In this document: piece by piece, positions 1 through 57,284 of the stretch
Layout: every line of letters starts with the position of its first letter
Position numbering within the stretch: position 1 is the first letter of the stretch
Source: Dendrobates tinctorius
Lineage: Eukaryota
DNA length: 64,000 bases
Assembly (NCBI RefSeq): GCF_039654945.1
Contig: NW_027361678.1
Location: forward strand, 12,834,001 to 12,898,000
Direction of reading: 5' to 3'
Notes under the pieces: generated by a model
Told to the model about the DNA's origin: nothing
Databases searched by the model: none
The model's input: only the letters and a program-made list of their open reading frames with translations
Translations under genes and position numbers: made by a program

Positions 1-3000
1 CAGAGATCAGGTGTGGAGTGCAGATAGCAGGGTGCGCAGTGCAGGACAGAGGGGGATCAGAGATCAGGTGTGGAGGGCAGATAGCACGGTGCGCAGTGCA
101 GGACAAAGGGGATCAAAGATCAGGTGTGGAGTGCAGATAGCAGGGTGCGCAATGCAGGACAGAGGGGCTCAGAGATCAGGTTATGAGTGCAGATAACAGG
201 GTGTGCAGTGCAGGACAGAGGGGCTCAGAGATCAGGTGAGGAGTGCAGATAGCAGGGTGCGCAGTGCAGGACAGAGGGGCTCAGAGATCAGGTGTGGAGT
301 GCAGATAGCAGGGTGCGCAGTGCAGGACAGAGGGGCTCAGAGATCAGGTGTGGAGTGCAGATAGCAGGGTGCGGAGTGCAGGACAGAGGGGGATCAGAGA
401 TCAGGTGTGGAGGGCAGATAGCAGGGTGCGCAGTGCAGGACAGAGGGGATCAGGTGTGGAGTGCAGATAGCAGGGTGCGCTGTGCAGGACAGAGGGGCTG
501 AGAGATCAGGTGTGGAGTGCAGATAGCAGGGTGCGCAGTGCAGGACAGGGGCTCAGAGATCAGGTGTGGAGTGCAGATAGCAGGGTGCGCAGTGCAGGAC
601 AGAGGGGCTCAGATCAGGTGTGGAGTGCAGATAGCAGGGTGCGCAGTGCAGGACAGAGGGGCTCAGAGATCAGGTGTGGAGCTCAGATAGAGTGCACAGT
701 GCAGGACAGGGGCTCAGAGATCAGGTGTGGAGTGCAGATAGCAGGGTGCGCAGTGCAGGACAGAGGGGGCTCAGAGATCAGGTGTGGAGTACAGATAGCA
801 GGGTGCGCAGTGCAGGACAGAGGGGATCAGAGATCAGGTGTGGAGGGCAGAGAGCAGTGTGCGCAGTGCAGGACAGAGGGGCTCAGAGATCAGGTGTGGA
901 GTGCAGATAGCATGGTGCGCAGTGCAGGACAGAGGGGATCAGGTGTGGAGTGCAGATAGCAGGGTGCGCAGTGCAGGACAGAGGGGCTGAGAGATCAGGT
1001 GTGGAGTGCAGATAGCAGGGTGCGCAGTGCAGGACAGAGGGGCTGAGAGATCAGGTGTGTAGTGCAGATAGCATTGTGCACAGTGCAGGACAGAGGGGCT
1101 CAGAGATCAGGTGTGGAGTGCAGATAGCAGGGTGCGCAGTGCAGGACAGAGGGGGATCAGAGATCAGGTGTGGAGGGCAGATAGCAGGGTGCGCAGTGCA
1201 GGACAGAGGGGATCAGGTGTGGAGTGCAGATAGCAGGGTGCACTGTGCAGGACAGAGGAGCTGAGAGATCAGGTGTGGAGTGCAGATAGCAGGGTGCGCA
1301 GTGCAGGACAGAGGGGCTCAGAGATCAGGTGTGGAGTGCAGATAGCAGGGTGCGCAGTGCAGGACAGAGGGGGCTGAGATCAGGTGTGGAGTGCAGATAG
1401 CAGGGTGCGCAGTGCAGGACAGAGGGGGATCAGAGATCAGGTGTAGAGTGCAGATAGCAGGGTGCGCAGTGCAGGACAGAGGGGGATCAGAGATCAGGTG
1501 TAGAGTGCAGATAGCAGGGTGCGCAGTGCAGGACAGAGGTGGATCAGAGATCAGGTGTGGAGTGCAGATAGCAGGGTGCGCAGTGCAGGACAGAGGGGCT
1601 GAGAGATCAGGTGTGGAGTGCAGATAGCAGGGTGCGCAGTGCAGGACAGAGGGGACTCAGAGATCAGGTGTGGAGTGCAGGACAGAGGGGCTCAGAGATC
1701 AGGTGATGAGTGCAGATAGCAGGGTGCGCAGTGCAGGACAGAGGGGCTCAGAGATCAGGTGAGGAGTGCAGATAGCAGGGTGCGCAGTGCAGGACAGAGG
1801 GGATCAGAGATCAGGTGTGGAGTGCAGATAGCAGGGTGCGCAGTGCAGGACAGAGGGAGCTCAGAGATCAGGTGTGGAGTGCAGATAGCAGGGTGCGTAG
1901 TGCAGGACAGAGGGGGCTCAGAGATCAGGTGTGGAGTGCAGATAGCAGGGTGCGCAGTGCAGGACAGAGAGGGACCAGAGATCAGGTGTGGAGTGCAGAT
2001 AGCAGGGTGCGCAGTGCAGGACAGAGGGGATCAGGTGTGGAGTGCAGATAGCAGGGTGCGCAGTGCAGGACAGAGGGGCTGAGAGATCAGGTGTGGAGTG
2101 CAGATAGCAGGGTGCGCAGTGCAGGACAAAGGGGGATCAGAGATCAGGTGTGGAGGGCAGATAGCAGGGTGCGCAGTGCAGGACAGAGGGGATCAGGTGT
2201 GGAGTGCAGATAGCAGGGTGCGCAGTGCAGGAGAGAGGGTCTCAGAGATCAGGTGTGGAGTGCAGATAGCAGGGTGCACAGTGTAGGACAGAGGGGATCA
2301 GAGATCAGGTGTGGAGTGCAGATAGCAGGGTGCTTAGTGCAGGACAGAGGGGCTCAGAGATCAAGTGTGGAGTGCAGATAGCAGGGTGCGCAGTGCAGGA
2401 CAGATGGGCTCAGAGATCAGGTGTGGAGTGCAGATAGCAGGGTGCACAGTGCAGGACAGAGGGGCTCAGAGATCAGGTGTGGAGTGCAGATAGTAGGGTG
2501 CGCAGTGCAGGACAGAGGGGCTCAGAGATCAGGTGTGGAGTGCAGATAGCAGGGTGCGCAGTGCAGGACAGAGGGGCTCAGATATCAGGTGTGGAGTGCA
2601 GATGGCAGGGTGCACAGTGCAGGACAGAGGGGCTCAGAGTTCAGGTGTGGAGTGCAGATAGCAGGGTGCGCAGTGCAGGACAGAGGGGCTCAGAAGTTAG
2701 TTGTGGAGTGCAGATAGCAGGGTGCGCAGTGCAGGACAGAGGGGATCAAAGATCAGGTGTGGAGTGCAGATAGCAGGGTGCGCAGTGCAGGACAGAGGGG
2801 CTCAGAGATCAGGTGAGGAGTGCAGATAGCAGGGTGCGCAGTTCAGGACAGAGGGGCTCAGAGATCAGGTGTGGAGTGCAGATAGCAGGGTGCGCAGTGC
2901 AGGACAGAGGGGCTCAGAGATCAGGTGTGGAGTGCAGATAGCAGGGTGTGCAGTGCAGGACAGAGGGGGATCAGAGATCAGGTGTGGAGGGCAGATAGCA

Positions 3001-6000
3001 GGGTGCGCAGTGCAGGACAGAGGGGATCAGGTGTGGAGTGCAGATAGCAGGGTGCGCTGTGCAGGACAGAGGGGCTGAGAGATCAGGTGTGGAGTGCAGA
3101 TAGCAGGTTGCGCAGTGCAGGACAGGGGCTCAGAGATCAGGTGTGGAGTGCAGAAAGCAGGGTGCGCAGTGCAGGACAGAGGGGATCAGAGATCAGGTGT
3201 GGAGTGCAGATAGCAGGGTGCGCAGTGCAGGACAGAGGGGCTCAGAGATCAGGTGTGGAGCGCAGATAGAGTGCACAGTGCAGGACAAAGGGGATCAGAG
3301 ATCAGGTGTGGAGTGCAGAGAGCAGTGTGCGCAGTGCAGGACAGAGGGGCTCAGAGATCAGGTGTGGAGTGCAGATAGCATGGTGCGCAGTGCAGGACAG
3401 AGGGGATCAGGTGTGGAGTGCAGATAGCAGGATGCACAGTGCAGGACAGAGGGGCTCAGAGCTCAGGTGTGGAGTGCAGATAGCAGTGTGCGCAGTGCAG
3501 GACAGAGGTGGCTCAGAGATCAGGTGTGGAGTGCAGATAGCAGGGTGCGCAGTGCAGGACAGAGGGGGCTCAGAGTTCAGGTGTGGAGTGTAGATAGCAG
3601 GGTGCGCAGTGCAGGACAGAGGGGCTCAGAGATCAGGAGTGGAGTGCAGATAGCAGGGTGCGCAGTGCAGGACAGAGGGGCTCAGAGATCAGGTGAGGAG
3701 TGCAGATAGCAGGGTGCGCAGTGCAGGACAGAGGGGCCCAGAGATCAGGTGTGGAGTGCAGATAGCAGGGTGCACAGTGCAGGACAGAGGGGCCCAGAGA
3801 TCAGGTGTGGAGTGTAGATAGCAGGGTGCGCAGTGCAGGACAGAGGGGTTCAGAGATCAGGTGAGGAGTGCAGATAGCAGGGTGCGCAGTGCAGGACAGA
3901 GGGGCCCAGAGATCAGGTGTGGAGTGCAGATAGCAGGGTGCGCAGTGCAGGACAGAGGGGCCCAGAGATCAGGTGTGGAGTGCAGATAGCAGGGTGCGTA
4001 GTGCAGGACAGAGGGGCTCAGAGATCAGGTGTGGAGTGCAGATAGCAGGGTGTGCAGTGCAGGACAGAGGGTCCCAGAGATCAGGTGTGGAGTGCAGATA
4101 GCAGGGTGCGCAGTGCTGGATAGAGGGGCTCAGAAGTTAGGTGTGGAGTGCAGATAGCAGGGTGTGCAGTGCAGGACAGAGGGGGCTCAGAGATCAGGTG
4201 TGGAGCGCAGATAGCAGGGTGCACAGTGCAGCACAGAGGGGATCAGAGATCAGGTGAGGAGTGCAGATAGTAGGGTGCGCAGTGCAGGACAGAGGGGCTC
4301 AGAGATCAGGTGTGGAGTGCAGATAGCAGGATGCTCAGTGCAGGACAGAGGGGACTCAGAGATCAGGTGTGGAGTGCAGATAGCAGGGTGCGCAGTGCAG
4401 GACAGAGAGGGCTCAGAGATCAGGTGTGGAGTGCAGATAGCAGGGTGCACAGTGCAGGACAGAGGGGGCTCAGAGATCAGGTGTGGAGTGCAGATAGCAG
4501 GGTGCGCAGTGCAGGACAGAGAGGGCTCAGAGATCAGGTGTGGAGTGCAGATAGCAGGGTGCGCAGTGCAGGACAGAGAGGGCTCAGAGATCAGGTGTGG
4601 AGTGCAGATAGCAGGGTGCGCAGTGCAGGACAGAGGGGCTCAGAGATCAGGTGTGGAGTGCAGATAGCAGGATGCTCAGTGCAGGACAGAGGGGACTCAG
4701 ATCAGGTGTGGAGTGCAGATAGCAGGGTGCGCAGTGCAGGACAAAGAGGGCTCAGAGATCAGGTGTGGAGTGCAGATAGCAGGGTGCGCAGTGCAGGACA
4801 GAGAGGGCTCAGAGATCAGGTGTGGAGTGCAGATAGCAGGGTGCGCAGTGCAGGACAGAGGGGCTCAGATCAGGTGTGGAGTGCAGATAGCAGGGTGCGC
4901 AGTGCAGGACAGAGGGGCTCAGAGATCAGGTGTGGAGTGCAGATAGCAGGATGCTCAGTGCAGGACAGAGGGGACTCAGAGATCAGGTGTGGAGTGCAGA
5001 TAGCAGGGTGCGCAGTGCAGGACAGAGAGGGATCAGAGATCAGGTGTGGAGTGCAGATAGCAGGGTGCGCAGTGCAGGACAGAGGGGCCCAGAGATCAGG
5101 TGTGGAGTGCAGATAGCAGGGTGCACAGTGCAGGACAGAGGGGGCTCAGATCAGGTGTGGAGTACAGATAGTAGGGTGCACAGTGCAGCACAGAGTGGGC
5201 TCAGAGATCAGGTGTGGAGTGCAGATAGCAGGGTGCACAGTGCAGGACAGAGGGGGCTCAGAGATCAGGTGTGGAGTACAGATAGTAGGGTGCACAGTGC
5301 AGCACAGAGGGGGATCAGAGATCAGGTGTGGAGTGCAGATAGCAGGGTGCACAGTGCAGGACAGAGGGGCTCAGAGATCAGGTGAGGAGTGCAGATAGCA
5401 GGGTGCGCAGTGCAGGACAGAGGGGGCTCAGAGATCAGGTGTGGAGTGCAGATAGCAGGGTGCGCAGTGCAGGACAGAGGGGGCTCAGAGATCAGGTGTG
5501 GAGTGCAGATAGCAGGGTGCGCAGTGCAGGACAGAGGGGGCTCAGAGATCGGGTGTGGAGTGCAGATAGCAGGGTGCGCAGTGCAGGACAGAGGGGGCTC
5601 AGAGATCAGGTGTGGAGTGCAGATAGCAGGTTGCGCAGTGCAGGACAGAGGGGGCTCAGAGATCAGGTGTGGAGTGCAGATAGCAGGGTGCGCAGTGCAG
5701 GACAGAGGGGGCTCAGAGATCAGGTGTGGAGTGCAGATAGCAGGGTGCGCAGTGCAGGACAGAGGGGGCTCAGAGATCAGGTGTGGAGTGCAGATAGCAG
5801 GGTGCTCAGTGCAGGACAGAGGGGGCTCAGAGATCAGGTGTGGAGTGCAGATAGCAGGGTGCGCAGTGCAGGACAGAGGGGGCTCAGAGATCAGGTGTGG
5901 AGTGCAGATAGCAGGGTGCGCAGTGCAGGACAGAGGGGGCTCAGAGATCAGGTGTGGAGTGCAGATAGCAGGGTGCACAGTGCAGGACAGAGGGGGCTCA

Positions 6001-8583
6001 GCGATCAGGTGTGGAGTGCAGATAGCAGGGTGCGCAGTGCAGGACAGAGGGGCTCAGAGATCAGGTGTGGAGTGCAGATAGCAGGGTGCGCAGTGCAGGA
6101 CAGAGAGGGCTCAGAGATCAGGTGTGGAGTGCAGATAGCAGGGTGCGCAGTGCAGGACAGAGGGGCTCAGAGATCAGGTGTGGAGTGCAGATAGCAGGGT
6201 GCGCAGTGCAGGACCGAGGGGCTCAGAGATCAGGTGTGGAGTGCAGATAGCAAGGTGCGCAGTGCAGGACCGAGGGGCTCAGAGATCAGGTGTGGAGTGC
6301 AGATAGCAGGGTGCGCAGTGCAGGACAGAGGGGGCTCAGAGATCAGGTGTGGAGTGCAGATAGCAGGGTGCGCAGTGCAGGACAGAGGGGGCTCAGAGAT
6401 CAGGTGTGGAGTGCAGATAGCAGGGTGCACAGTGCAGGACAGAGGGGGCTCAGAGATCAGGTGTGGAGTGCAGATAGCAGGGTGCTCAGTGCAGGACAGA
6501 GGGGGCTCAGAGATCAGGTGTGGAGTGCAGATAGCAGGGTGTGCAGTGCAGGACAGAGGGGGCTCAGAGATCAGGTGTGGAGTGCAGATAGCAGGGTGCG
6601 CAGTGCAGGACAGAGGGGGCTCAGAGATCAGGTGTGGAGTGCAGATAGGATGCACAGTGCAGGACAGAGGGGGCTCAGAGATCAGGTGTGGAGTGCAGAT
6701 AGCAGGGTGCGCAGTGCAGGACAGAGGGGCTCAGAGATCAGGTGTGGAGTGCAGATAGCAGGGTGCGCAGTGCAGGACAGAGAGGGCTCAGAGATCAGGT
6801 GTGGAGTACAGATAGCAGGGTGCGCAGTGCAGGACAGAGGGGGCTCAGAGATCAGGTGTGGAGTGCAGATAGCAGGGTGCGCAGTGCAGGACAGAGGGGC
6901 TCAGAGATCAGGTGTGGAGTGCAGATAGCAGGGTGCACAGTGCAGGACAGAGGGGGCTCAGATCAGGTGTGGAGTACAGATAGTAGGGTGCACAGTGCAG
7001 CACAGAGTGGGCTCAGAGATCAGGTGTGGAGTGCAAATAGCAGGGTGCACAGTGCAGGACAGAGGGGGCTCAGAGATCAGGTGTGGAGTGCAGATAGCAG
7101 GGTGCGCAGTGCAGGACAGAGGGGCTCAGAGATCAGGTGTGGAGTGCAGATAGCAGGGTGCACAGTGCAGGACAGAGGGGGCTCAGATCAGGTGTGGAGT
7201 ACAGATAGTAGGGTGCACAGTGCAGCACAGAGTGGGCTCAGAGATCAGGTGTGGAGTGCAGATAGCAGGGTGCGCAGTGCAGGACAGAGGGGGCTCAGAG
7301 ATCAGGTGTGGAGTGCAGATAGCAGGGTGCGCAGTGCAGGACAGAGGGGGCTCAGAGATCAGGTGTGGAGTGCAGATAGCAGGGTGCGCAGTGCAGCACA
7401 GAGTGGGCTCAGAGATCAGGTGTGGAGTGCAGATAGCAGGGTGCGCAGTGCAGGACAGAGGGGGCTCAGAGATCAGGTGTGGAGTGCAGATAGCAGGGTG
7501 CGCAGTGCAGGACAGAGGGGCTCAGAGATCAGGTGTGGAGTGCAGATAGCAGGGTGCGCAGTGCAGGACAGAGGGGCTCAGAGATCAGGTGTGGAGTGCA
7601 GATAGCAGGGTGCGCAGTGCAGGACAGAGGGGGCTCAGAGATCAGGTGTGGAGTGCAGATAGCAGGGTGCGCAGTGCAGGACAGAGGGGGCTCAGAGATC
7701 AGGTGTGGAGTGCAGATAGCAGGGTGCGCAGTGCAGCACAGAGTGGGCTCAGAGATCAGGTGTGGAGTGCAGATAGCAGGGTGCGCAGTGCAGGACAGAG
7801 GGGGCTCAGAGATCAGGTGTGGAGTGCAGATAGCAGGGTGCGCAGTGCAGGACCGAGGGGCTCAGAGATCAGGTGTGGAGTGCAGATAGTAGGGTGCACA
7901 GTGCAGCACAGAGTGGGCTCAGAGATCAGGTGTGGAGTGCAGATAGCAGGGTGCGCAGTGCAGGACCGAGGGGCTCAGAGATCAGGTGTGGAGTGCAGAT
8001 AGCAGGGTGCGCAGTGCAGGACCGAGGGGCTCAGAGATCAGGTGTGGAGTACAGATAGCAGGGTGCGCAGTGCAGGACAGAGGGGCTCAGAGATCAGGTG
8101 TGGAGAGCAGATAGCATGGTGCGCAGTGCAGGACAGAGGGGCTCAGAGATCAGGTGTGGAGTGCAGATAGCAGGGTGCGCAGTGCAGGACAGAGAGGGCT
8201 CAGAGATCAGGTGTGGAGTGCAGATAGCAGGGTGCGCAGTGCAGGACCGAGGGGCTCAGAGATCAGGTGTGGAGTGCAGATAGCAGGGTGCGCAGTGCAG
8301 GACAGAGGGGCTCAGAGATCAGGTGTGGAGTGCAGATAGCAGGGTGCGCAGTGCAGGACAGAGAGGGCTCAGAGATCAGGTGTGGAGTGCAGATAGCAGG
8401 GTGCGCAGTGCAGGACAGAGGGGCTCAGAGATCAGGTGTGGAGTGCAGATAGCAGGGTGCTCAGTGCAGGACAGAGGGGCTCAGAGATCAGGTGTGGAGT
8501 GCAGATAGCAGGGTGCGCAGTGCAGGACAGAGGGGCTCAGAGATCAGGTGTGGAGTGCAGATAGTAGGTTGCACAGTGCAGGA
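1..8583. repeat. Tandem satellite, 56/57-bp unit (CAGAGATCAGGTGTGGAGTGCAGATAGCAGGGTGCGCAGTGCAGGACAGAGGGG[G]CT), ~150 copies, runs off the window start
   Basis: Unit visible directly throughout 1-8583; decays into unique sequence at ~8580; all ORFs here are translations of the repeat. Confidence 0.98.
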
Positions 8584-8781
8584 AGAGTGCTGCTGAACAA
8601 AGGTGAAGCTCTCCACCCTCTGGCAGTCAGGTAAAGCACCGCTAGCTGCTGGCTGAGAAGTTGTGAGACGATGAAGGAGGAGTCAGCCTGCTCCTCTCCT
8701 TTAATAACAGTCCCGCCTGCAGTTTTGGAGCGGCTCTCTCCCTATTCAGAGCATCCCCAGCACTAATGCCCTCTCCTCCCC

Positions 8782-8789
8782 TGACGTCA
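8782..8789 (+). promoter_or_regulatory. Canonical cAMP response element TGACGTCA of the dio2 promoter
   Basis: Perfect palindrome ~70 bp upstream of the TATA box; same arrangement as the known functional CRE of mammalian DIO2. Confidence 0.85.
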
Positions 8790-8830
8790 AAGAGCAGATC
8801 ACAGGAAGATTAGGGTTTTTCATTTCTCTT

Positions 8831-8841
8831 ATTGCAGCAAT
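8831..8841 (+). promoter_or_regulatory. C/EBP-like element ATTGCAGCAAT
   Basis: Quasi-palindrome between the CRE and TATA box; factor identity is inference. Confidence 0.45.
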
Positions 8842-8854
8842 TAGCCCGGGACTG

Positions 8855-8861
8855 TATAAAA
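8855..8861 (+). promoter_or_regulatory. TATA box TATAAAA (TSS inferred near 8885)
   Basis: TGTATAAAAGG downstream of the CRE and ~490 bp upstream of the dio2 ATG. Confidence 0.8.
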
Positions 8862-9037
8862 GGACGAGAGAAAGGGGAGGGAGGCAGAGGGAAACGTGGG
8901 GACAAAAAGAGACAGCTGAGAGGCAGAGACAGCCAGAGGAGGGTGGGAGGAAGGAAGAAAGGGGAGTTTAGCCTCTTCCAGCTGAAAAAAAAATCCACCT
9001 GGTCCAACAAAGTTCCGAAACTTTTTTCCTATAAGCA

Positions 9038-9055
9038 ATGAGAGGAAGCAGCTGA
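9038..9055 (+). other. Upstream ORF MRGSS* in the inferred dio2 5' UTR
   Basis: ATG AGA GGA AGC AGC TGA, G at -3; first ATG after the TATA box. Confidence 0.6.
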
Positions 9056-9061
9056 AGCCAC

Positions 9062-9269
9062 GCTGCAGACGCTCCTCTGTGAGGACAGCAGTGCTGCAGA
9101 CGATCCTATGTGAGGACAGACAGCAGTGCTGCAGACGATCCTATGTGAGGACAGACAGCAGTGCTGCAGACGATCCTATGTGAGGACAGACAGCAGTGCT
9201 GCAGACGATCCTATGTGAGGACAGACAGCAGTGCTGCAGACGATCCTATGTGAGGACAGACAGCAGTGC
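9062..9269 (+). repeat. 35-bp minisatellite in the inferred dio2 5' UTR; 5 identical units plus a degenerate first unit; each full unit contains ATGTGA
   Basis: Unit CAGCAGTGCTGCAGACGATCCTATGTGAGGACAGA; ATG at 9108, 9143, 9178, 9213, 9248. Confidence 0.95.
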
Positions 9270-9343
9270 CGCGGACACCTGCTCAGTGCATCCTTCTCAT
9301 TCCCGGCAGTAAGCGCCGCTCAGTGTGGAGGAAGGCGGCCGTG

Positions 9344-9565
9344 ATGGGGCTGCTCAGTGTGGACCTGCTCATCACTCTGCAGATCCTGCCCGGCTTCGTC
9401 TCGAACTGTCTCTTCCTGGCTCTCTATGACTCTGTGGTGCTGGTGAAGCACGTGCTCCTGCAGCTGAACCGCTCCCGCTCCCGGCAGAGCCCATGGCGGC
9501 GGATGCTCACCCCGGAGGGGCTGCGCTGTGTCTGGAACAGCTTCCTATTGGACGCTTACAAGCAG
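9344..9565 (+). CDS. dio2: Type II iodothyronine deiodinase, coding exon 1 (74 codons, N-terminal membrane anchor)
   Basis: MGLLSVDLLITLQILPGFVSNCLFLALYDSVVLVKH...WRRMLTPEGLRCVWNSFLLDAYKQ is the D2 N-terminus; strong Kozak context GTGATGG; donor CAG|GTATGA, phase 0. Confidence 0.97.
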
Positions 9566-9845
9566 GTATGAGTGGCGCCGCTTCTGCGCGGCGGCTGCAC
9601 GTGTGCTTAGCGCTGACGATAGTGTCCCCTCTGCTGCACAGGTCTGTGACGTGCTGTGTGCACAGGATTAATACGCATGCTGATTGTATTGCTTTACATG
9701 AAGTGCCGGCTCCTCTGGGGACAGTGAAAAGTGACATTGCTAGGATGTGAACATTAGACCCTCTCTGGAGACAACGTTTCCACAGCCACCAGAACCTTTC
9801 CCCAGAGGGAATCTGCAGGGATTGTGCTTTCCAGAAAGTGCAGAT

Positions 9846-10787
9846 CATCCGCGCTGTCGTCGGAGGGGTCATCCGCGCTGTCGTCGGAGGGCGCATCCGC
9901 GCTGTCGTCGGTGGGGGCATCCGCGCTGTCGTCGGAGGGGTCATCCGCGCTGTCGTCGGAGGGGTCATCCGCGCTGTCGTCGGAGGGGTCATCCGCGCTG
10001 TCGTCGGAGGGGTCATCCGCGCTGTCGTCGGTGGGCGCATCCGCGCTGTCGTCGGAGGGGTCATCCGCGCTGTCGTCGGTGGGCGCATCCGCGCTGTCGT
10101 CGGTGGGCGCATCCGCGCTGTCGTCGGTGGGCGCATCCGCGCTGTCGTCGGAGGGGTCATCCGCGCTGTCGTCGGTGGGCGCATCCGCGCTGTCGTCGGA
10201 GGGGTCATCCGCGCTGTCGTCGGTGGGCGCATCCGCGCTGTCGTCGGAGGGGTCATCCGCGCTGTCGTCGGTGGGCGCATCCGCGCTGTCGTCGGAGGGG
10301 TCATCCGCGCTGTCGTCGGTGGGCGCATCCGCGCTGTCGTCGGAGGGGTCATCCGCGCTGTCGTCGGTGGGGGCATCCGCGCTGTCGTCGGTGGGGGCAT
10401 CCGCGCTGTCGTCGGTGGGGGCATCCGCGCTGTCGTCGGTGGGGGCATCCGCGCTGTCGTCGGAGGGGTCATCCGCGCTGTCGTCGGAGGGGTCATCCGC
10501 GCTGTCGTCGGAGGGGTCATCCGCGCTGTCGTCGGTGGGCGCATCCGCGCTGTCGTCGGAGGGGTCATCCGCGCTGTCGTCGGTGGGCGCATCCGCGCTG
10601 TCGTCGGAGGGGTCATCCGCGCTGTCGTCGGTGGGGGCATCCGCGCTGTCGTCGGTGGGCGCATCCGCGCTGTCGTCGGTGGGCGCATCCGCGCTGTCGT
10701 CGGTGGGGGCATCCGCGCTGTCGTCGGTGGGGGCATCCGCGCTGTCGTCGGTGGGGGCATCCGCGCTGTCGTCGGTGGGCGCATCCA
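9846..10787. repeat. CpG-rich 21-bp minisatellite (CATCCGCGCTGTCGTCGG plus variable AGGGGT/TGGGCG/TGGGGG ending), ~45 copies
   Basis: Directly visible; a stop-free unit with length divisible by 3 explains the long ORFs in five frames. Confidence 0.97.
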
Positions 10788-11341
10788 AGCTATCGTTAGT
10801 AGGGCGCATCTGCTCTGTCATCGTTGGGTTCGTACTCTGTCGTTGGTGGTCATATCTGTATTGAGAAGAGTCCTGCAGGGTGAAGTGGTGTTGTTGTAAA
10901 CAATCCCTATGTTGTGCCACCTTCAGTTGGCATCAGGGCATCATACCTCAATACTGCCCTCTGCTGGTGCACACATCTGATCAATCATTACTGCAGTTGT
11001 TGCAGGACTTTATTGCCTGGGCAGTTTTACTGAACAGCTCTGGAAACACAAGGTCTTTAATGTATGAATGAACAATTTAATTAGTGGATTCCTGCAGAAA
11101 TTTGCTGCTCAGTTCATTTTTTCGGTTGTTTTCTATGGAAATTCCACTCGAAGAAATAAGTAAATGTTTTCATGAAGAAGAGGCCACAATGCAAAAATGA
11201 CAAGTGCAATATCATATAGAGCAGCCTGGGCACCTTTATCTCCTTCGCTGCACACCGTAGTAGGAATGCTGTTGTATTCGTAGCTAATGATGGGCAGGAT
11301 GACAACGTCATCGGAACCATCTCTAGATGCAGACTCTAATG

Positions 11342-28102: not shown

Positions 28103-28663
28103 GTAAAATTAGGAGGAGAAGCACCAAACTCCAGTGTCATCCATGTGTCCCGCAAGAAAGCAAGTAGCATCTCTGCAAAACCAGGGGCACCATGTAACCT
28201 TCTAGACTTTGCCAGCTCTGAGCGTCCATTGGTTGTCAATTTTGGATCAGCCACATGACCCCCCTTCGTAAGCCAGCTGTCAGTCTTCAGCAAGCTGGTG
28301 GAGGAGTTTTCCAATGTAGCCGATTTCCTTTTGGTCTACATTGATGAAGCTCATCCCTCGGATGGCTGGGCTGCTCCTGGTGTGGGCTCCTATGAAGTCA
28401 AAAAACACAGAAACCAAGAAGACCGATGTGCTGCAGCCAACAAACTCCTAGAGAAATACTCCCTCCCACCACAGTGCCAGGTGGTTGCTGACTGTATGGA
28501 CAATAATGCCAATGTTGCCTATGGTGTCTCCTTTGAAAGGGTATGCATTGTGCAAAGGCAAAAAATTGTTTATCTTGGAGGTAAAGGACCTTTCTTCTAT
28601 AACCTCCATGAAGTGCAGCAGTGGCTGGAACAGACATTTGGGGACAGAAGGTTGAACGATTAA
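28103..28663 (+). CDS. dio2: Type II iodothyronine deiodinase, coding exon 2 (catalytic domain, contains Sec)
   Basis: VKLGGEAPNSSVIHV...LLDFASSERPLVVNFGSAT-U-PPF...ADFLLVYIDEAHPSDGW...YGVSFERVCIVQRQKIVYLGGKGPF; ends at TAA 28661-28663; total 260 aa. Confidence 0.97.
28256..28258 (+). other. dio2: In-frame UGA selenocysteine codon (Sec126)
   Basis: GCC ACA TGA CCC CCC TTC gives the D2 active-site motif SATUPPF. Confidence 0.95.
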
Positions 28664-31546: not shown

Positions 31547-31650
31547 CCTGCCGGGCGGCCACTGTGATGTGGGTATGATGGGCACCATTGAAAGAGACCA
31601 GCTCTCTGTTGCTGCCTGGATGGAGTCACATCATTGCTGCCCCCGGCAGG
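31547..31650 (+). promoter_or_regulatory. SECIS element (form 2) of dio2
   Basis: ATGAT (31575) / GGAT (31618) core; 11-nt helix II; AAA at 31591; apical mini-stem GAGA-ccagc-TCTC; helix I TGATGTG/CACATCA; outer stem CCTGCCGGG/CCCGGCAGG. Confidence 0.93.
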
Positions 31651-55069: not shown

Positions 55070-55637
55070 ACTTGTCAGGATCGCTGGTGTGTCGCTAAAT
55101 GATCGCTGGTGAGCTGCCAAACAGGCAGATCTCAGCAGTGATCAGGACAGCGACACGCGGGTAACAAGCGACGCACGTCGCTTAGTTACCCGCAGTGTAC
55201 GTTAAGATACCAGCACGCTGGGGCAGGGAGCTGGTAACCAAGGTAAACATCGGGTTTCTAAGCGCCGCGCGGTGCTTAGAAACCCGATGTTTACCTTGGT
55301 TACCAATTCCCTGCACCAGCGCACTGGTATCTAATGTACATATCGGGTGTCTAAGCGCCGCGCGGTGCATAGAAACCCGATGTTTACCTTGGTTTCCAGC
55401 TTGCTGATCGCTGGTCTCCCACTTGCCACACGCAGCGATGCGTGCTGGCCAGCGGGAGACCAACGATCAAAAAAATGTCCAGGCCATTCGAGCACGATCA
55501 GCGATACCCGGCAGGGGGGCCGGTCGCTGATAAGTGTCACACACAGCGATCTCGCTGGTGAAATCGCTGTTGCGTCACAAAACTGATGACTCATCAGCGA
55601 TCCCGCTAGCGAGATCGCTGTGTGTGACGTGGGCTTT
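55070..55637. mobile_element. Harbinger-like MITE of the 13258/19681 family with internal palindromic repeats
   Basis: Shares GATCGCTGGT.., CAGGCAGATCTC, TTGCGTCACAAAA and terminal TGTGTGACGTGGGCT motifs; left end truncated. Confidence 0.65.
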
Positions 55638-56129: not shown

Positions 56130-56691
56130 CCGATAAGCATGGAGGAGGAGGTGTGATGGTGTGGGGGTGCTTTGCTGGTGACACTGCTGGGGATTTTTCA
56201 AAATTGAAGGCATACTGAACCAGCATGGCTACCACAGCATCTTGCAGCGGCATGCTATTCCATCCGGTTTGCGTTTAGTTGGACCAACATTTATTTTTCA
56301 ACAGGACAATGACCCCAAACACACCTCCAGGCTGTGTAAGGGCTATCTGACCAAGAAGGAGAGTGATGGGGTGCTATGCCAGATGACCTGGCCTCCACTG
56401 TCACCAGACCTGAACCCAGTCGAGATGGTTTGGGTGAGCTGGACCGCAGAGTGAAGGCAAAAGGGCCAACAAGTGCTAAGCATCTCTGGGAACTCCTTCA
56501 AGACTGTTGGAAGACCATTTCCGGTGACTACCTCTTGAAGCTCATCAAGAGAATGCCAAGAGTGTGGAAAGCAGTAATCAAAGCAAAAGCATAGTTTGAT
56601 GCCTTCAAAGTGAATCTACAATTTTCATAGTCATGAAAATAAAGAAAACTCTTTGAATGAGAAGGTGTGTCCAAACTTTTGGTCTGTACTG
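56130..56691 (+). mobile_element. 3' fragment of a Tc1 element
   Basis: KHGGGGVMVWGCF, FQQDNDPKH, SPDLNPVE; right TIR ending ..GGTCTGTACTG followed by TA. Confidence 0.82.
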
Positions 56692-57284
56692 TATATATAT
56701 TGCATAGAGAGATAGATAGAAGATTAGCAGGTTAAACATTACTGTTAAATATATTACTGCTTTTCTTCTATCTATCTCTCTACGCAATATAAATACATAT
56801 ATATGTCTGTGTCACTGATAGAAAATATATGTATATATATATTTTTTTTCTATGTATATATATATCTATTCTATCTATTCTATTCTAACCTGTCACTCTG
56901 TGATTATACTGTAAGCGACAGATCATTTGCCGGCTTTTAATCTATCATATACAGGGGTTGGACAAAATAATGGAAACACCTGGAAACATCAACAAAAGTT
57001 AGTTTAATATGGTGTAGGTCCACCTTTTGTGGCAATTACAGCCTCAATTCTCCGAGGTATGCATTCATATGAATTGTAGCCCATTCTTCAGTTAAAACAC
57101 CCTCCAGTTCTTTGAGCGACGATGGCGGCGGAAATTGACGTCTAACTTGAATCTCTAAAATCGACCATAAATGCTCAATAATGTTGAGGTCTGAGGATTG
57201 TGGGGGCCAGATGAGATGCTCAACTTCATTACAATGTTCCTCGTGCTATGCTTTAACGATTCTAGCTGTATGAATTGGTGCATT

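What the first reader, a model, noticed from the sequence alone, without database searches (positions are those of the whole stretch)
9038..9346. Minisatellite-encoded array of AUG-UGA start-stop elements in the 5' UTR of a SECIS-bearing mRNA: candidate copy-number and selenium-sensitive translational control of dio2
Seen: five identical 35-bp units each carry ATG-TGA (9108, 9143, 9178, 9213, 9248). The degenerate first unit has CTG-TGA, so the AUG appears to have been gained and then amplified. The AUGs at 9143, 9248 and 9038 are in frame with the Dio2 ATG at 9344. In that frame the only stops between 9038 and 9344 are UGA (9053, 9080, 9146, 9251). Known: D2 translation is repressed by uORFs, minimal AUG-stop elements can stall ribosomes (e.g. 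plant NIP5;1), and a SECIS can recode UGA in cis. Inference: repeat number could tune D2 output, and so local T3 production and metamorphic timing. Sec insertion at 9251 would give a 32-aa N-terminal extension (M-U-GQTAVPRTPAQCILLIPGSKRRSVWRKAAV). Caveats: the Kozak context is weak (C at -3, U at +4), the TSS is inferred, and the UGA-only frame may simply reflect the repeat's sequence.
Basis: partly seen in the sequence, partly recalled or inferred. Interest (0 to 1): 0.8.

Follow-up and report, generated by a model that had tools for sequence, protein, structure and literature searches.

The report
Start-stop repeat in frog dio2 leader
A young 35-base tandem repeat in the untranslated leader of a poison frog's dio2 gene (the enzyme that activates thyroid hormone) carries five copies of a start codon followed at once by a stop codon. 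It is real and present in the mRNA, but it is not conserved, is probably at most a mild brake on translation, and shows no support for the proposed selenium link.

Summary
Five identical 35-bp units (9093-9267) each hold ATG-TGA, a degenerate first unit holds CTG-TGA, and the array lies between a CRE/TATA promoter and the dio2 ATG (9344).

cDNA contigs spliced exon1|exon2 show the array is in the mRNA leader.

Comparison with other frogs dates it:
- Ranitomeya imitator has an orthologous 31-bp x3 repeat with CTGGAA, so no ATG and no TGA.
- A closer relative (organism B) has two ATG-TGA units.
- Ranid, other neobatrachian, Pelobates and Xenopus leaders have no start-stop.

What frogs do conserve is a different element, the 5-codon uORF at 9038.

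The selenium idea fails. The last ATG-TGA is out of frame with dio2 in organism B (net +7 nt of indels), the "extension" region is the fastest-changing part of the leader, and the UGA-only frame follows trivially from the unit's sequence.

A quarter of this window is minisatellite. My best reading is a recent, probably near-neutral minisatellite that adds weak-context start-stop elements, with at most a modest copy-number-graded repression. Start-stop elements and 5'UTR VNTRs are both already known.

The parts
8782..8789 (+). Consensus CRE (TGACGTCA), 73 nt upstream of the TATA box
   Evidence: Read directly. The same spacing is conserved in Ranitomeya, the ranid, Pelobates and X. laevis.
8855..8861 (+). 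TATAAAA box. It predicts a start near 8886, which is not proven.
   Evidence: cDNA contigs nevertheless extend upstream of it.
9038..9055 (+). uORF1: ATG plus 4 codons plus TGA (MRGSS*), with G at -3. This is the conserved uORF of frog dio2 leaders.
   Evidence: Orthologues are MRGSS* in Ranitomeya, MRETS* in the ranid, MRETN* in other neobatrachians and MS* in Pelobates.
9062..9092 (+). Degenerate 31-nt first unit with CTG-TGA (CTG-GAA in organism B and in Ranitomeya-type units)
9093..9267 (+). Five identical 35-nt units, each with a start-stop ATG-TGA (ATG at 9108, 9143, 9178, 9213, 9248) in weak context (C at -3, T at +4)
   Evidence: Repeat unitigs are present in cDNA runs X1, X8 and X9.
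9268..9343 (+). Diverged last partial unit and unique tail before the main ATG. This is the putative N-terminal extension frame and is fast-evolving.
   Evidence: There are 11 substitutions and 6 indels (net +7 nt) against organism B. It is much shorter in Ranitomeya.
9344..9565 (+). dio2 exon 1 coding part (74 aa, phase 0), with the splice donor GT at 9566
   Evidence: Spliced contigs continue into exon 2.
28103..28663 (+). dio2 exon 2 coding part. The Sec codon TGA is at 28256-28258 and the stop TAA at 28661-28663.
   Evidence: The C-terminal domain is 122/122 identical to Ranitomeya imitator Dio2.
31567..31631 (+). Candidate SECIS in the 3'UTR (AUGA, 12 nt, AAA, 3' GA). It scores below Rfam's threshold.
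   Evidence: SECIS_1 gives 21.3 bits against a gathering score of 35, E=9.9. The hairpin has z=-3.3. It is nearly invariant against Ranitomeya, while the rest of the 3'UTR is 88-90% identical.

Best explanation
This is a young, lineage-specific minisatellite in the 5' leader of the dio2 mRNA of a dendrobatid frog. An older 31-bp repeat without a start codon (still seen in Ranitomeya) acquired an ATG-TGA variant unit in the common ancestor of the window species and its close relative B. That unit also carries a 4-bp ACAG duplication, which makes it 35 bp. In the window species it was amplified to five identical copies. Each unit is a start-stop element in poor initiation context. Most scanning 43S complexes should leak past it. 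The minority that initiate terminate at once and may resume scanning. The expected net effect is a modest, roughly multiplicative, copy-number-graded reduction in initiation at the strong-context dio2 AUG. This acts on top of the conserved 5-codon uORF1. With assumed capture of 5-30% per unit and 30-80% re-initiation, five units leave 31-95% of the flux (toy model). The array is most likely a near-neutral by-product of this genome's very active minisatellite formation, not a selected or selenium-responsive switch. Shown: the sequence, its presence in spliced cDNA, its evolutionary origin and the between-species copy number. Inferred: any translational effect and its size.
For: Presence in mRNA: the organism-B contig runs 8631..9117, 17 nt, 9233..9568 and on into exon 2. 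Organism-A runs X1, X8 and X9 hold both flanks spliced to exon 2. They also hold the two unitigs (46 and 49 nt, i.e. 16 + 19 = 35 k-mers) expected from a 35-bp cycle. Origin: Ranitomeya has 31-bp x3.3 units reading CTGGAAGG. Organism B has two ATGTGA units. The ranid, other neobatrachians, Pelobates and X. laevis have none. Context is weak for the units, whereas uORF1 has G at -3 and the main ATG has G at -3 and G at +4. 25% of the window is tandem repeat, and orthologous arrays flank the promoter and sit in intron 1 of Ranitomeya. Start-stops repress reporters in human cells and occur up to nine per leader (PMC13338717). D2 translation is known to be controlled by short 5'UTR ORFs (PMC11301063 citing Gereben 2002). 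The leader's predicted structure is unremarkable (z=-1.05).
Against: There is no functional datum: no ribosome footprints, no reporter and no protein measurement. The transcription start is not mapped, and contigs cannot show ends. Human start-stops can retain ribosomes more strongly than ordinary uORFs, so five of them could be more repressive than a leaky-scanning estimate suggests. Five perfectly identical units could also reflect recent selection for expansion rather than drift. Copy number in the RNA-sampled animals is not determined.
Confidence: 0.6

Rival explanations
1. Strong, selected translational gate. The start-stop units stall 80S ribosomes, as in human start-stop elements, the mouse Hoxa11 TIE or plant NIP5;1. 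Repeat number then acts as a heritable rheostat for D2 protein, local T3 and developmental timing.
For: Start-stops are more repressive than minimal uORFs and retain ribosomes. Hoxa11 shows that a suboptimal-context start-stop can still stall an 80S. Copy number differs between related species at 0, 2 and 5. The five units are identical, so the expansion is recent. Dendrobatids have lost the second uORF that ranids and other neobatrachians keep at -65/-76, so the units could compensate for it.
Against: Context is the weakest class (pyrimidine at -3, U at +4). There is no strong downstream hairpin like that of Hoxa11; the local stems are 4 bp and the overall z is -1.05. The units are absent from Ranitomeya and all other frogs examined. 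The genome makes minisatellites everywhere, so an ATG-stop-bearing unit in some leader is expected by chance.
Confidence: 0.1
2. No measurable effect. Scanning ribosomes ignore the weak AUGs, and the array is functionally silent spacer in the leader.
For: The context is weak. There is no conservation. ATG-stop hexamers are at chance frequency in the window. Re-initiation after a one-codon ORF is normally efficient (established knowledge of re-initiation after very short uORFs).
Against: Five uAUGs in series, plus 175 nt of added GC-rich leader, rarely have zero effect. Human start-stops without an optimal context were still repressive as a class.
Confidence: 0.25
3. Selenium-sensitive recoding. 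The 3'UTR SECIS recodes the UGA at 9251 (and 9146) as Sec, giving an N-terminally extended D2 or making uORF termination depend on selenium.
For: The mRNA must carry a SECIS, because it has an in-frame Sec codon at 28256 and a conserved candidate at 31567-31631. In the window species the ATG at 9248 is in frame with 9344 with no other stop between.
Against: In organism B the same unit is 103 nt from the main ATG, in frame +1. The extension region has frame-breaking indels and the highest divergence in the leader. It is absent in Ranitomeya. The UGA-only frame follows from the unit's composition. A weak AUG multiplied by inefficient Sec decoding (collisions at UGA, PMC12632765 abstract) would give a negligible product. 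The extension would place a basic segment in front of D2's N-terminal membrane anchor.
Confidence: 0.02
4. DNA-level element. The array acts as a promoter-proximal or downstream transcriptional element (repeated factor sites), as proposed for the TYMS 5'UTR 28-bp VNTR, rather than through translation.
For: It lies within about 200-400 bp of the CRE/TATA core promoter. The TYMS VNTR is a precedent (PMC3320636).
Against: No recognisable repeated factor motif was identified. The older 31-bp repeat is poorly conserved in sequence between genera. This was not tested further.
Confidence: 0.03

Closest known systems
Start-stop elements (AUG immediately followed by a stop) in animal 5'UTRs: human ATF4, MORF4L1, SLC39A1, PSPC1, MAP2K6 (Rendleman et al., NAR 2026, PMC13338717); mouse Hoxa11 TIE (PMC8172242)
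   Same: It is an AUG-stop hexamer in the leader of a low-abundance regulatory gene's mRNA. Several can occur per leader (up to nine in some human genes). A species-specific, non-conserved start-stop is also reported for Hoxa11.
   Different: Here the elements are copies of one minisatellite unit, identical and spaced 35 nt apart. The context is very weak and there is no strong downstream stem-loop. No occupancy or reporter evidence exists.
Arabidopsis NIP5;1 AUG-UAA (Tanaka et al. 2016, as cited in PMC8172242)
   Same: It is a minimal AUG-stop that could stall ribosomes and lower main-ORF translation.
   Different: NIP5;1 responds to a ligand (boron) and triggers mRNA decay. Nothing here indicates a ligand, and the selenium analogy fails the frame-conservation test.
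Short inhibitory ORFs of amniote DIO2 5'UTRs (Gereben et al. 2002, Mol Endocrinol 16:1667, cited in PMC11301063)
   Same: The gene and the principle are the same: long leaders with several very short uORFs that lower D2 translation. Frog leaders examined here all carry 1-3 uORFs of 2-11 codons.
   Different: The conserved frog element is uORF1 at 9038, not the repeat. The start-stop units are an addition in one dendrobatid lineage. Homology of uORF1 to the human tripeptide sORF was not tested.
TYMS 5'UTR 28-bp VNTR (2R/3R) (PMC3320636)
   Same: It is a minisatellite inside a 5'UTR whose copy number is proposed to set expression.
   Different: TYMS units carry E-box-like sites and no uAUG. Polymorphism within the species is documented for TYMS and untested here.

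Membership tests
Start-stop element (minimal uORF) | AUG directly followed by a stop codon | tested here: met
   ATGTGA at 9108, 9143, 9178, 9213 and 9248
Start-stop element (minimal uORF) | Lies in the 5' leader of the mature mRNA | tested here: met
   The organism-B contig is continuous from 8631 through the units into exon 2. Organism-A runs hold both flanks and the repeat unitigs. The transcription start itself is not mapped.
Start-stop element (minimal uORF) | Ribosome occupancy on the element, and derepression when it is mutated | not testable with these tools
   No ribosome profiling or reporter data are available.
Start-stop element (minimal uORF) | Conservation above flanking sequence, as seen for the functional human set | tested here: not met
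   Present only in the window species and organism B. Absent in Ranitomeya, the ranid, other neobatrachians, Pelobates and X. laevis.
Minisatellite / VNTR | Head-to-tail units of 10-100 bp | tested here: met
   TRF period 35, 6.3 copies, 95% matches
Minisatellite / VNTR | Copy number varies among individuals | tested here: inconclusive
   It varies between species at 3 x 31 bp, 2 and 5 ATGTGA units. Within the species, contigs break in the repeat. The unitig depth ratio of 1.43-1.49 against 1.25 expected for five units is only a hint.
SECIS-directed UGA recoding site | UGA in a reading frame that is conserved through and beyond the codon | tested here: not met
   The frame is shifted by +7 nt in organism B. 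There is no ATG or TGA in Ranitomeya. Indels in the extension region are not multiples of three.
SECIS-directed UGA recoding site | SECIS element in the same mRNA | tested here: inconclusive
   There is no hit at Rfam's gathering score. SECIS_1 gives 21.3 bits, E=9.9, at 31567-31631 with AUGA/AAA/GA. The site is nearly invariant against Ranitomeya. A SECIS is required by the genuine Sec codon at 28256.
Conserved DIO2 leader uORF | Same position and length across species | tested here: met
   This is met for uORF1 at 9038, not for the repeat. It has five codons plus TGA in dendrobatids, the ranid and other neobatrachians, and is shortened to two codons in Pelobates.

The most novel reading that the evidence does not exclude
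A minisatellite has turned a single start-stop element into a copy-number-variable array (0, 2 and 5 units in three related poison frogs). The array works as an evolvable, heritable rheostat of D2 translation, replacing the ancestral second uORF that dendrobatids lost, and so shifts tissue T3 activation between species or individuals.
Probability: 0.1. Interest if true: 0.55.

Novelty: new member of a known kind. Interest (0 to 1): 0.3.

Why it matters
If the units are read by ribosomes, related poison frogs offer a natural allelic series (0, 2 and 5 identical start-stops at fixed 35-nt spacing). The series sits in the leader of a gene whose protein output is known to be set after transcription. 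That would be a clean natural test of how start-stop elements add up, and an example of tandem-repeat dynamics creating translational control. If they are not read, it is one more case of a functional-looking motif amplified by chance in a genome where a quarter of this locus is minisatellite. The more solid biological result here is a side product. Frog dio2 leaders share one conserved 5-codon uORF (9038), while the other uORFs turn over.

Tried and rejected
- Rfam at gathering thresholds on the whole window gave nothing. The permissive run gave only a sub-threshold SECIS_1 hit and chance miRNA-like hairpins.
- Folding the leader looked for a special structure or a Hoxa11-like downstream stem. 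The result was unremarkable, z=-1.05.
- I looked for the window's own or organism B's Dio2 fragments in the protein collection to fetch their contigs. They were not present. The nearest hits were a ranid and other neobatrachians, so organism B's leader had to be rebuilt from the difference tables. That rebuild is approximate in indel placement but exact in net length (13 gap letters).
- Copy number could not be read from contig depth in organism-A RNA runs. The k=31 graph collapses the 35-bp cycle, so it is not decisive.
- Earlier scan notes searched by words returned nothing.
- Literature searches found no paper on uORF UGA recoding in selenoprotein mRNAs, nor one on dio2 uORFs in amphibians.
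- Several protein hits looked mammalian or primate. I fetched no contigs for them and did not follow them up.

Full report
WHAT IS THERE

The stretch 9062-9276 is a tandem repeat of period 35 (6.3 copies, 95% matches). In register it consists of:
- a 31-nt degenerate unit (9062-9092);
- five identical 35-nt units (9093-9267);
- a diverged tail.

Each full unit contains ATG-TGA, with the ATG at 9108, 9143, 9178, 9213 and 9248. The first unit has CTG-TGA at 9077.

Downstream, ATG 9344 opens Dio2 exon 1 (74 aa), whose relatives all carry Pfam T4_deiodinase. Exon 2 starts at 28103, holds the selenocysteine codon TGA at 28256 and ends at TAA 28661. Upstream are a consensus CRE (8782) and TATAAAA (8855), 73 nt apart.

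IS IT IN THE mRNA?

I laid Logan contigs of four public runs on 8600-9800. All four runs hold contigs that leave the genome at the exon-1 donor and continue with the first letters of exon 2, so they are cDNA.

In the related organism B, one 2.5-kb contig runs from 8631 through the repeat region and exon 1 into exon 2.

In organism A (the window's species; three runs from two studies) the k=31 graph breaks inside the array. Even so, both flanks are present (8554/8663-9113, and 9240-9568 spliced to exon 2). The two unitigs expected from a 35-bp cycle are also present: 46 nt plus 49 nt, which is 16 + 19 = 35 k-mers. No GT..AG joint removes the array.

So the array is part of the leader. The transcription start remains open. 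Contigs run upstream of the TATA box in the dendrobatids (to 8631, 8663 and <=8554) and in a ranid. Contigs cannot show RNA ends.

WHERE IT CAME FROM

The window's Dio2 C-terminal domain is 122/122 identical to that of Ranitomeya imitator, so the genome is a dendrobatid. An earlier scan note calls it the dyeing poison frog; I did not verify this independently.

The Ranitomeya locus (L012) is collinear with the window. It has:
- an orthologous upstream minisatellite;
- the same CRE and TATA;
- the same 5-codon uORF1;
- an orthologous intronic 24-bp array;
- at the position of the finding, a 31-bp x3.3 repeat whose units read CTGGAAGG, with no ATG and no TGA.

I rebuilt organism B's leader from the difference tables. 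It has a first unit with CTG-GAA, a 31-nt unit with ATG-TGA, an 11-nt fragment and one 35-nt unit with ATG-TGA.

Other leaders have at most a single proto-unit and no ATG-stop hexamer. These are a ranid (L001-L009), other unidentified neobatrachians (L013-L018), Pelobates (L011) and Xenopus laevis (L010).

The order of events is therefore:
1. An old 31-bp repeat existed.
2. A unit gained ATG-TGA (CTGGAA to ATGTGA) plus a 4-bp ACAG duplication in the A+B ancestor.
3. That unit was amplified to five identical copies in the window species.

WHAT IS CONSERVED INSTEAD

uORF1 (ATG 9038, four more codons, TGA; G at -3) keeps its position, length and stop codon in Ranitomeya (MRGSS), the ranid (MRETS) and the other neobatrachians (MRETN). 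It is shortened to two codons in Pelobates.

A second uORF at -65/-76 is shared by the ranid and the other neobatrachians but has lost its ATG in dendrobatids.

Every frog leader examined has one to three uORFs of 2-11 codons. This fits what is known for amniote DIO2, where short 5'UTR ORFs regulate translation (PMC11301063 citing Gereben et al. 2002).

THE SELENIUM PART

The mRNA must carry a SECIS because of the genuine Sec codon. Rfam finds none at its gathering score. A sub-threshold SECIS_1 match (21.3 bits, E=9.9) at 31567-31631 has AUGA, a 12-nt arm, AAA and a 3' GA. It is nearly invariant against Ranitomeya, while the surrounding 3'UTR is 88-90% identical. It is a reasonable candidate.

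Recoding of the leader UGAs is not supported, for these reasons:
- In organism B both ATG-TGA units lie in frame +1 relative to the dio2 ATG, at 103 and 145 nt.
- The 76 nt between the array and the ATG carry 11 substitutions and six indels of 1, 1, 2, 1, 1 and 7 nt between A and B. This is the most divergent part of the leader.
- That stretch is mostly missing in Ranitomeya.
- The UGA-only frame is explained by the unit holding a single stop triplet and by 35 = 2 mod 3.
- A weak AUG multiplied by inefficient Sec decoding would give a negligible product.

HOW IT MOST LIKELY WORKS

Each unit's AUG has C at -3 and U at +4, the weakest context class. uORF1 has G at -3, and the main AUG has G at -3 and G at +4. 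The leader's predicted structure is not unusual (z=-1.05). There is no strong stem at +14 to +20 like the one that makes the Hoxa11 start-stop effective.

By the scanning model, most 43S complexes pass each unit. Those that initiate terminate at once and may resume scanning.

I ran a toy calculation with 5-30% capture per unit and 30-80% re-initiation. Both ranges are assumptions, not measurements.

| Units | Flux reaching the main AUG |
|---|---|
| 2 | 62-98% |
| 5 | 31-95% |

Human start-stops, which occur in about 1,400 genes and up to nine per leader, are repressive and retain ribosomes. A larger effect therefore cannot be excluded.

BACKGROUND RATE

A quarter of this window is tandem repeat. 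Earlier notes on this genome list hundreds of minisatellites that copy gene-proximal signals. ATG-stop hexamers are at chance frequency in the window, and a 35-nt unit has about a 3% chance of holding one. An array like this somewhere among the genome's leaders is expected without selection.

VERDICT

This is a real, transcribed, recently expanded minisatellite of start-stop elements in the dio2 leader, with between-species copy-number differences. It is probably near-neutral or a mild translational damper, and it is not a selenium sensor.

It combines two known kinds of element, start-stop elements and 5'UTR VNTRs, and is best filed as a new member of these. The natural 0/2/5 series is a convenient test system if someone wants one.

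Noticed in passing
window 1-8587; L012:1-2191: An 8.6-kb minisatellite of 56-bp units abuts the dio2 promoter. An orthologous 51-bp array sits at the same place in Ranitomeya imitator. cDNA contigs of run X8 run into its last unit.
   Followed up: partly
window 8554-8886: cDNA contigs of three frog lineages extend upstream of the conserved CRE/TATA core promoter. A conserved TTTAATAA lies at 8700, and a ranid contig has an adapter junction at the equivalent of about 8749. There may be a second, upstream start, which would add uORFs at 8671 (31 codons) and 8766 (15 codons).
   Followed up: partly
window 9038-9055: The five-codon uORF1 (MRGSS*) is conserved in position, length and TGA stop across dendrobatid, ranid and other neobatrachian dio2 leaders. 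It is the likeliest functional uORF of the gene in frogs.
   Followed up: yes
window 9320-9343; L002:433-456; L013:184-216: A second uORF (ATGAAGGAAG..., 7-10 codons, 65-76 nt before the main ATG) is shared by the ranid and other neobatrachians but has lost its ATG in dendrobatids (GTGGAGGAAGG).
   Followed up: partly
window 9846-10828; L012:3323-4085: A 24-bp x41 minisatellite lies 280 bp into intron 1 and is orthologous between the two dendrobatid genera.
   Followed up: no
window 31567-31631: The candidate dio2 SECIS lies 2.9 kb after the stop codon. It is below Rfam's threshold but nearly invariant between genera. Similarity to Ranitomeya ends at about 31992, which is possibly the 3' end of the gene.
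   Followed up: partly
window 28640-28663: This frog Dio2 ends ...GDRRLND followed by TAA. It has no second, C-terminal UGA codon of the kind present in mammalian DIO2.
   Followed up: no
runs X1 and X8: The depth ratio of the two repeat unitigs is 1.43-1.49. The expected ratio is 1.25 for five units, 1.33 for four and 1.5 for three. This is a weak hint that the RNA-sampled animals carry fewer units than the assembly.
   Followed up: partly
window 55226-55311 and 56682-56806: Long perfect hairpins gave sub-threshold matches to unrelated miRNA families in the permissive Rfam run. They are probably inverted repeats of transposable elements.
   Followed up: no
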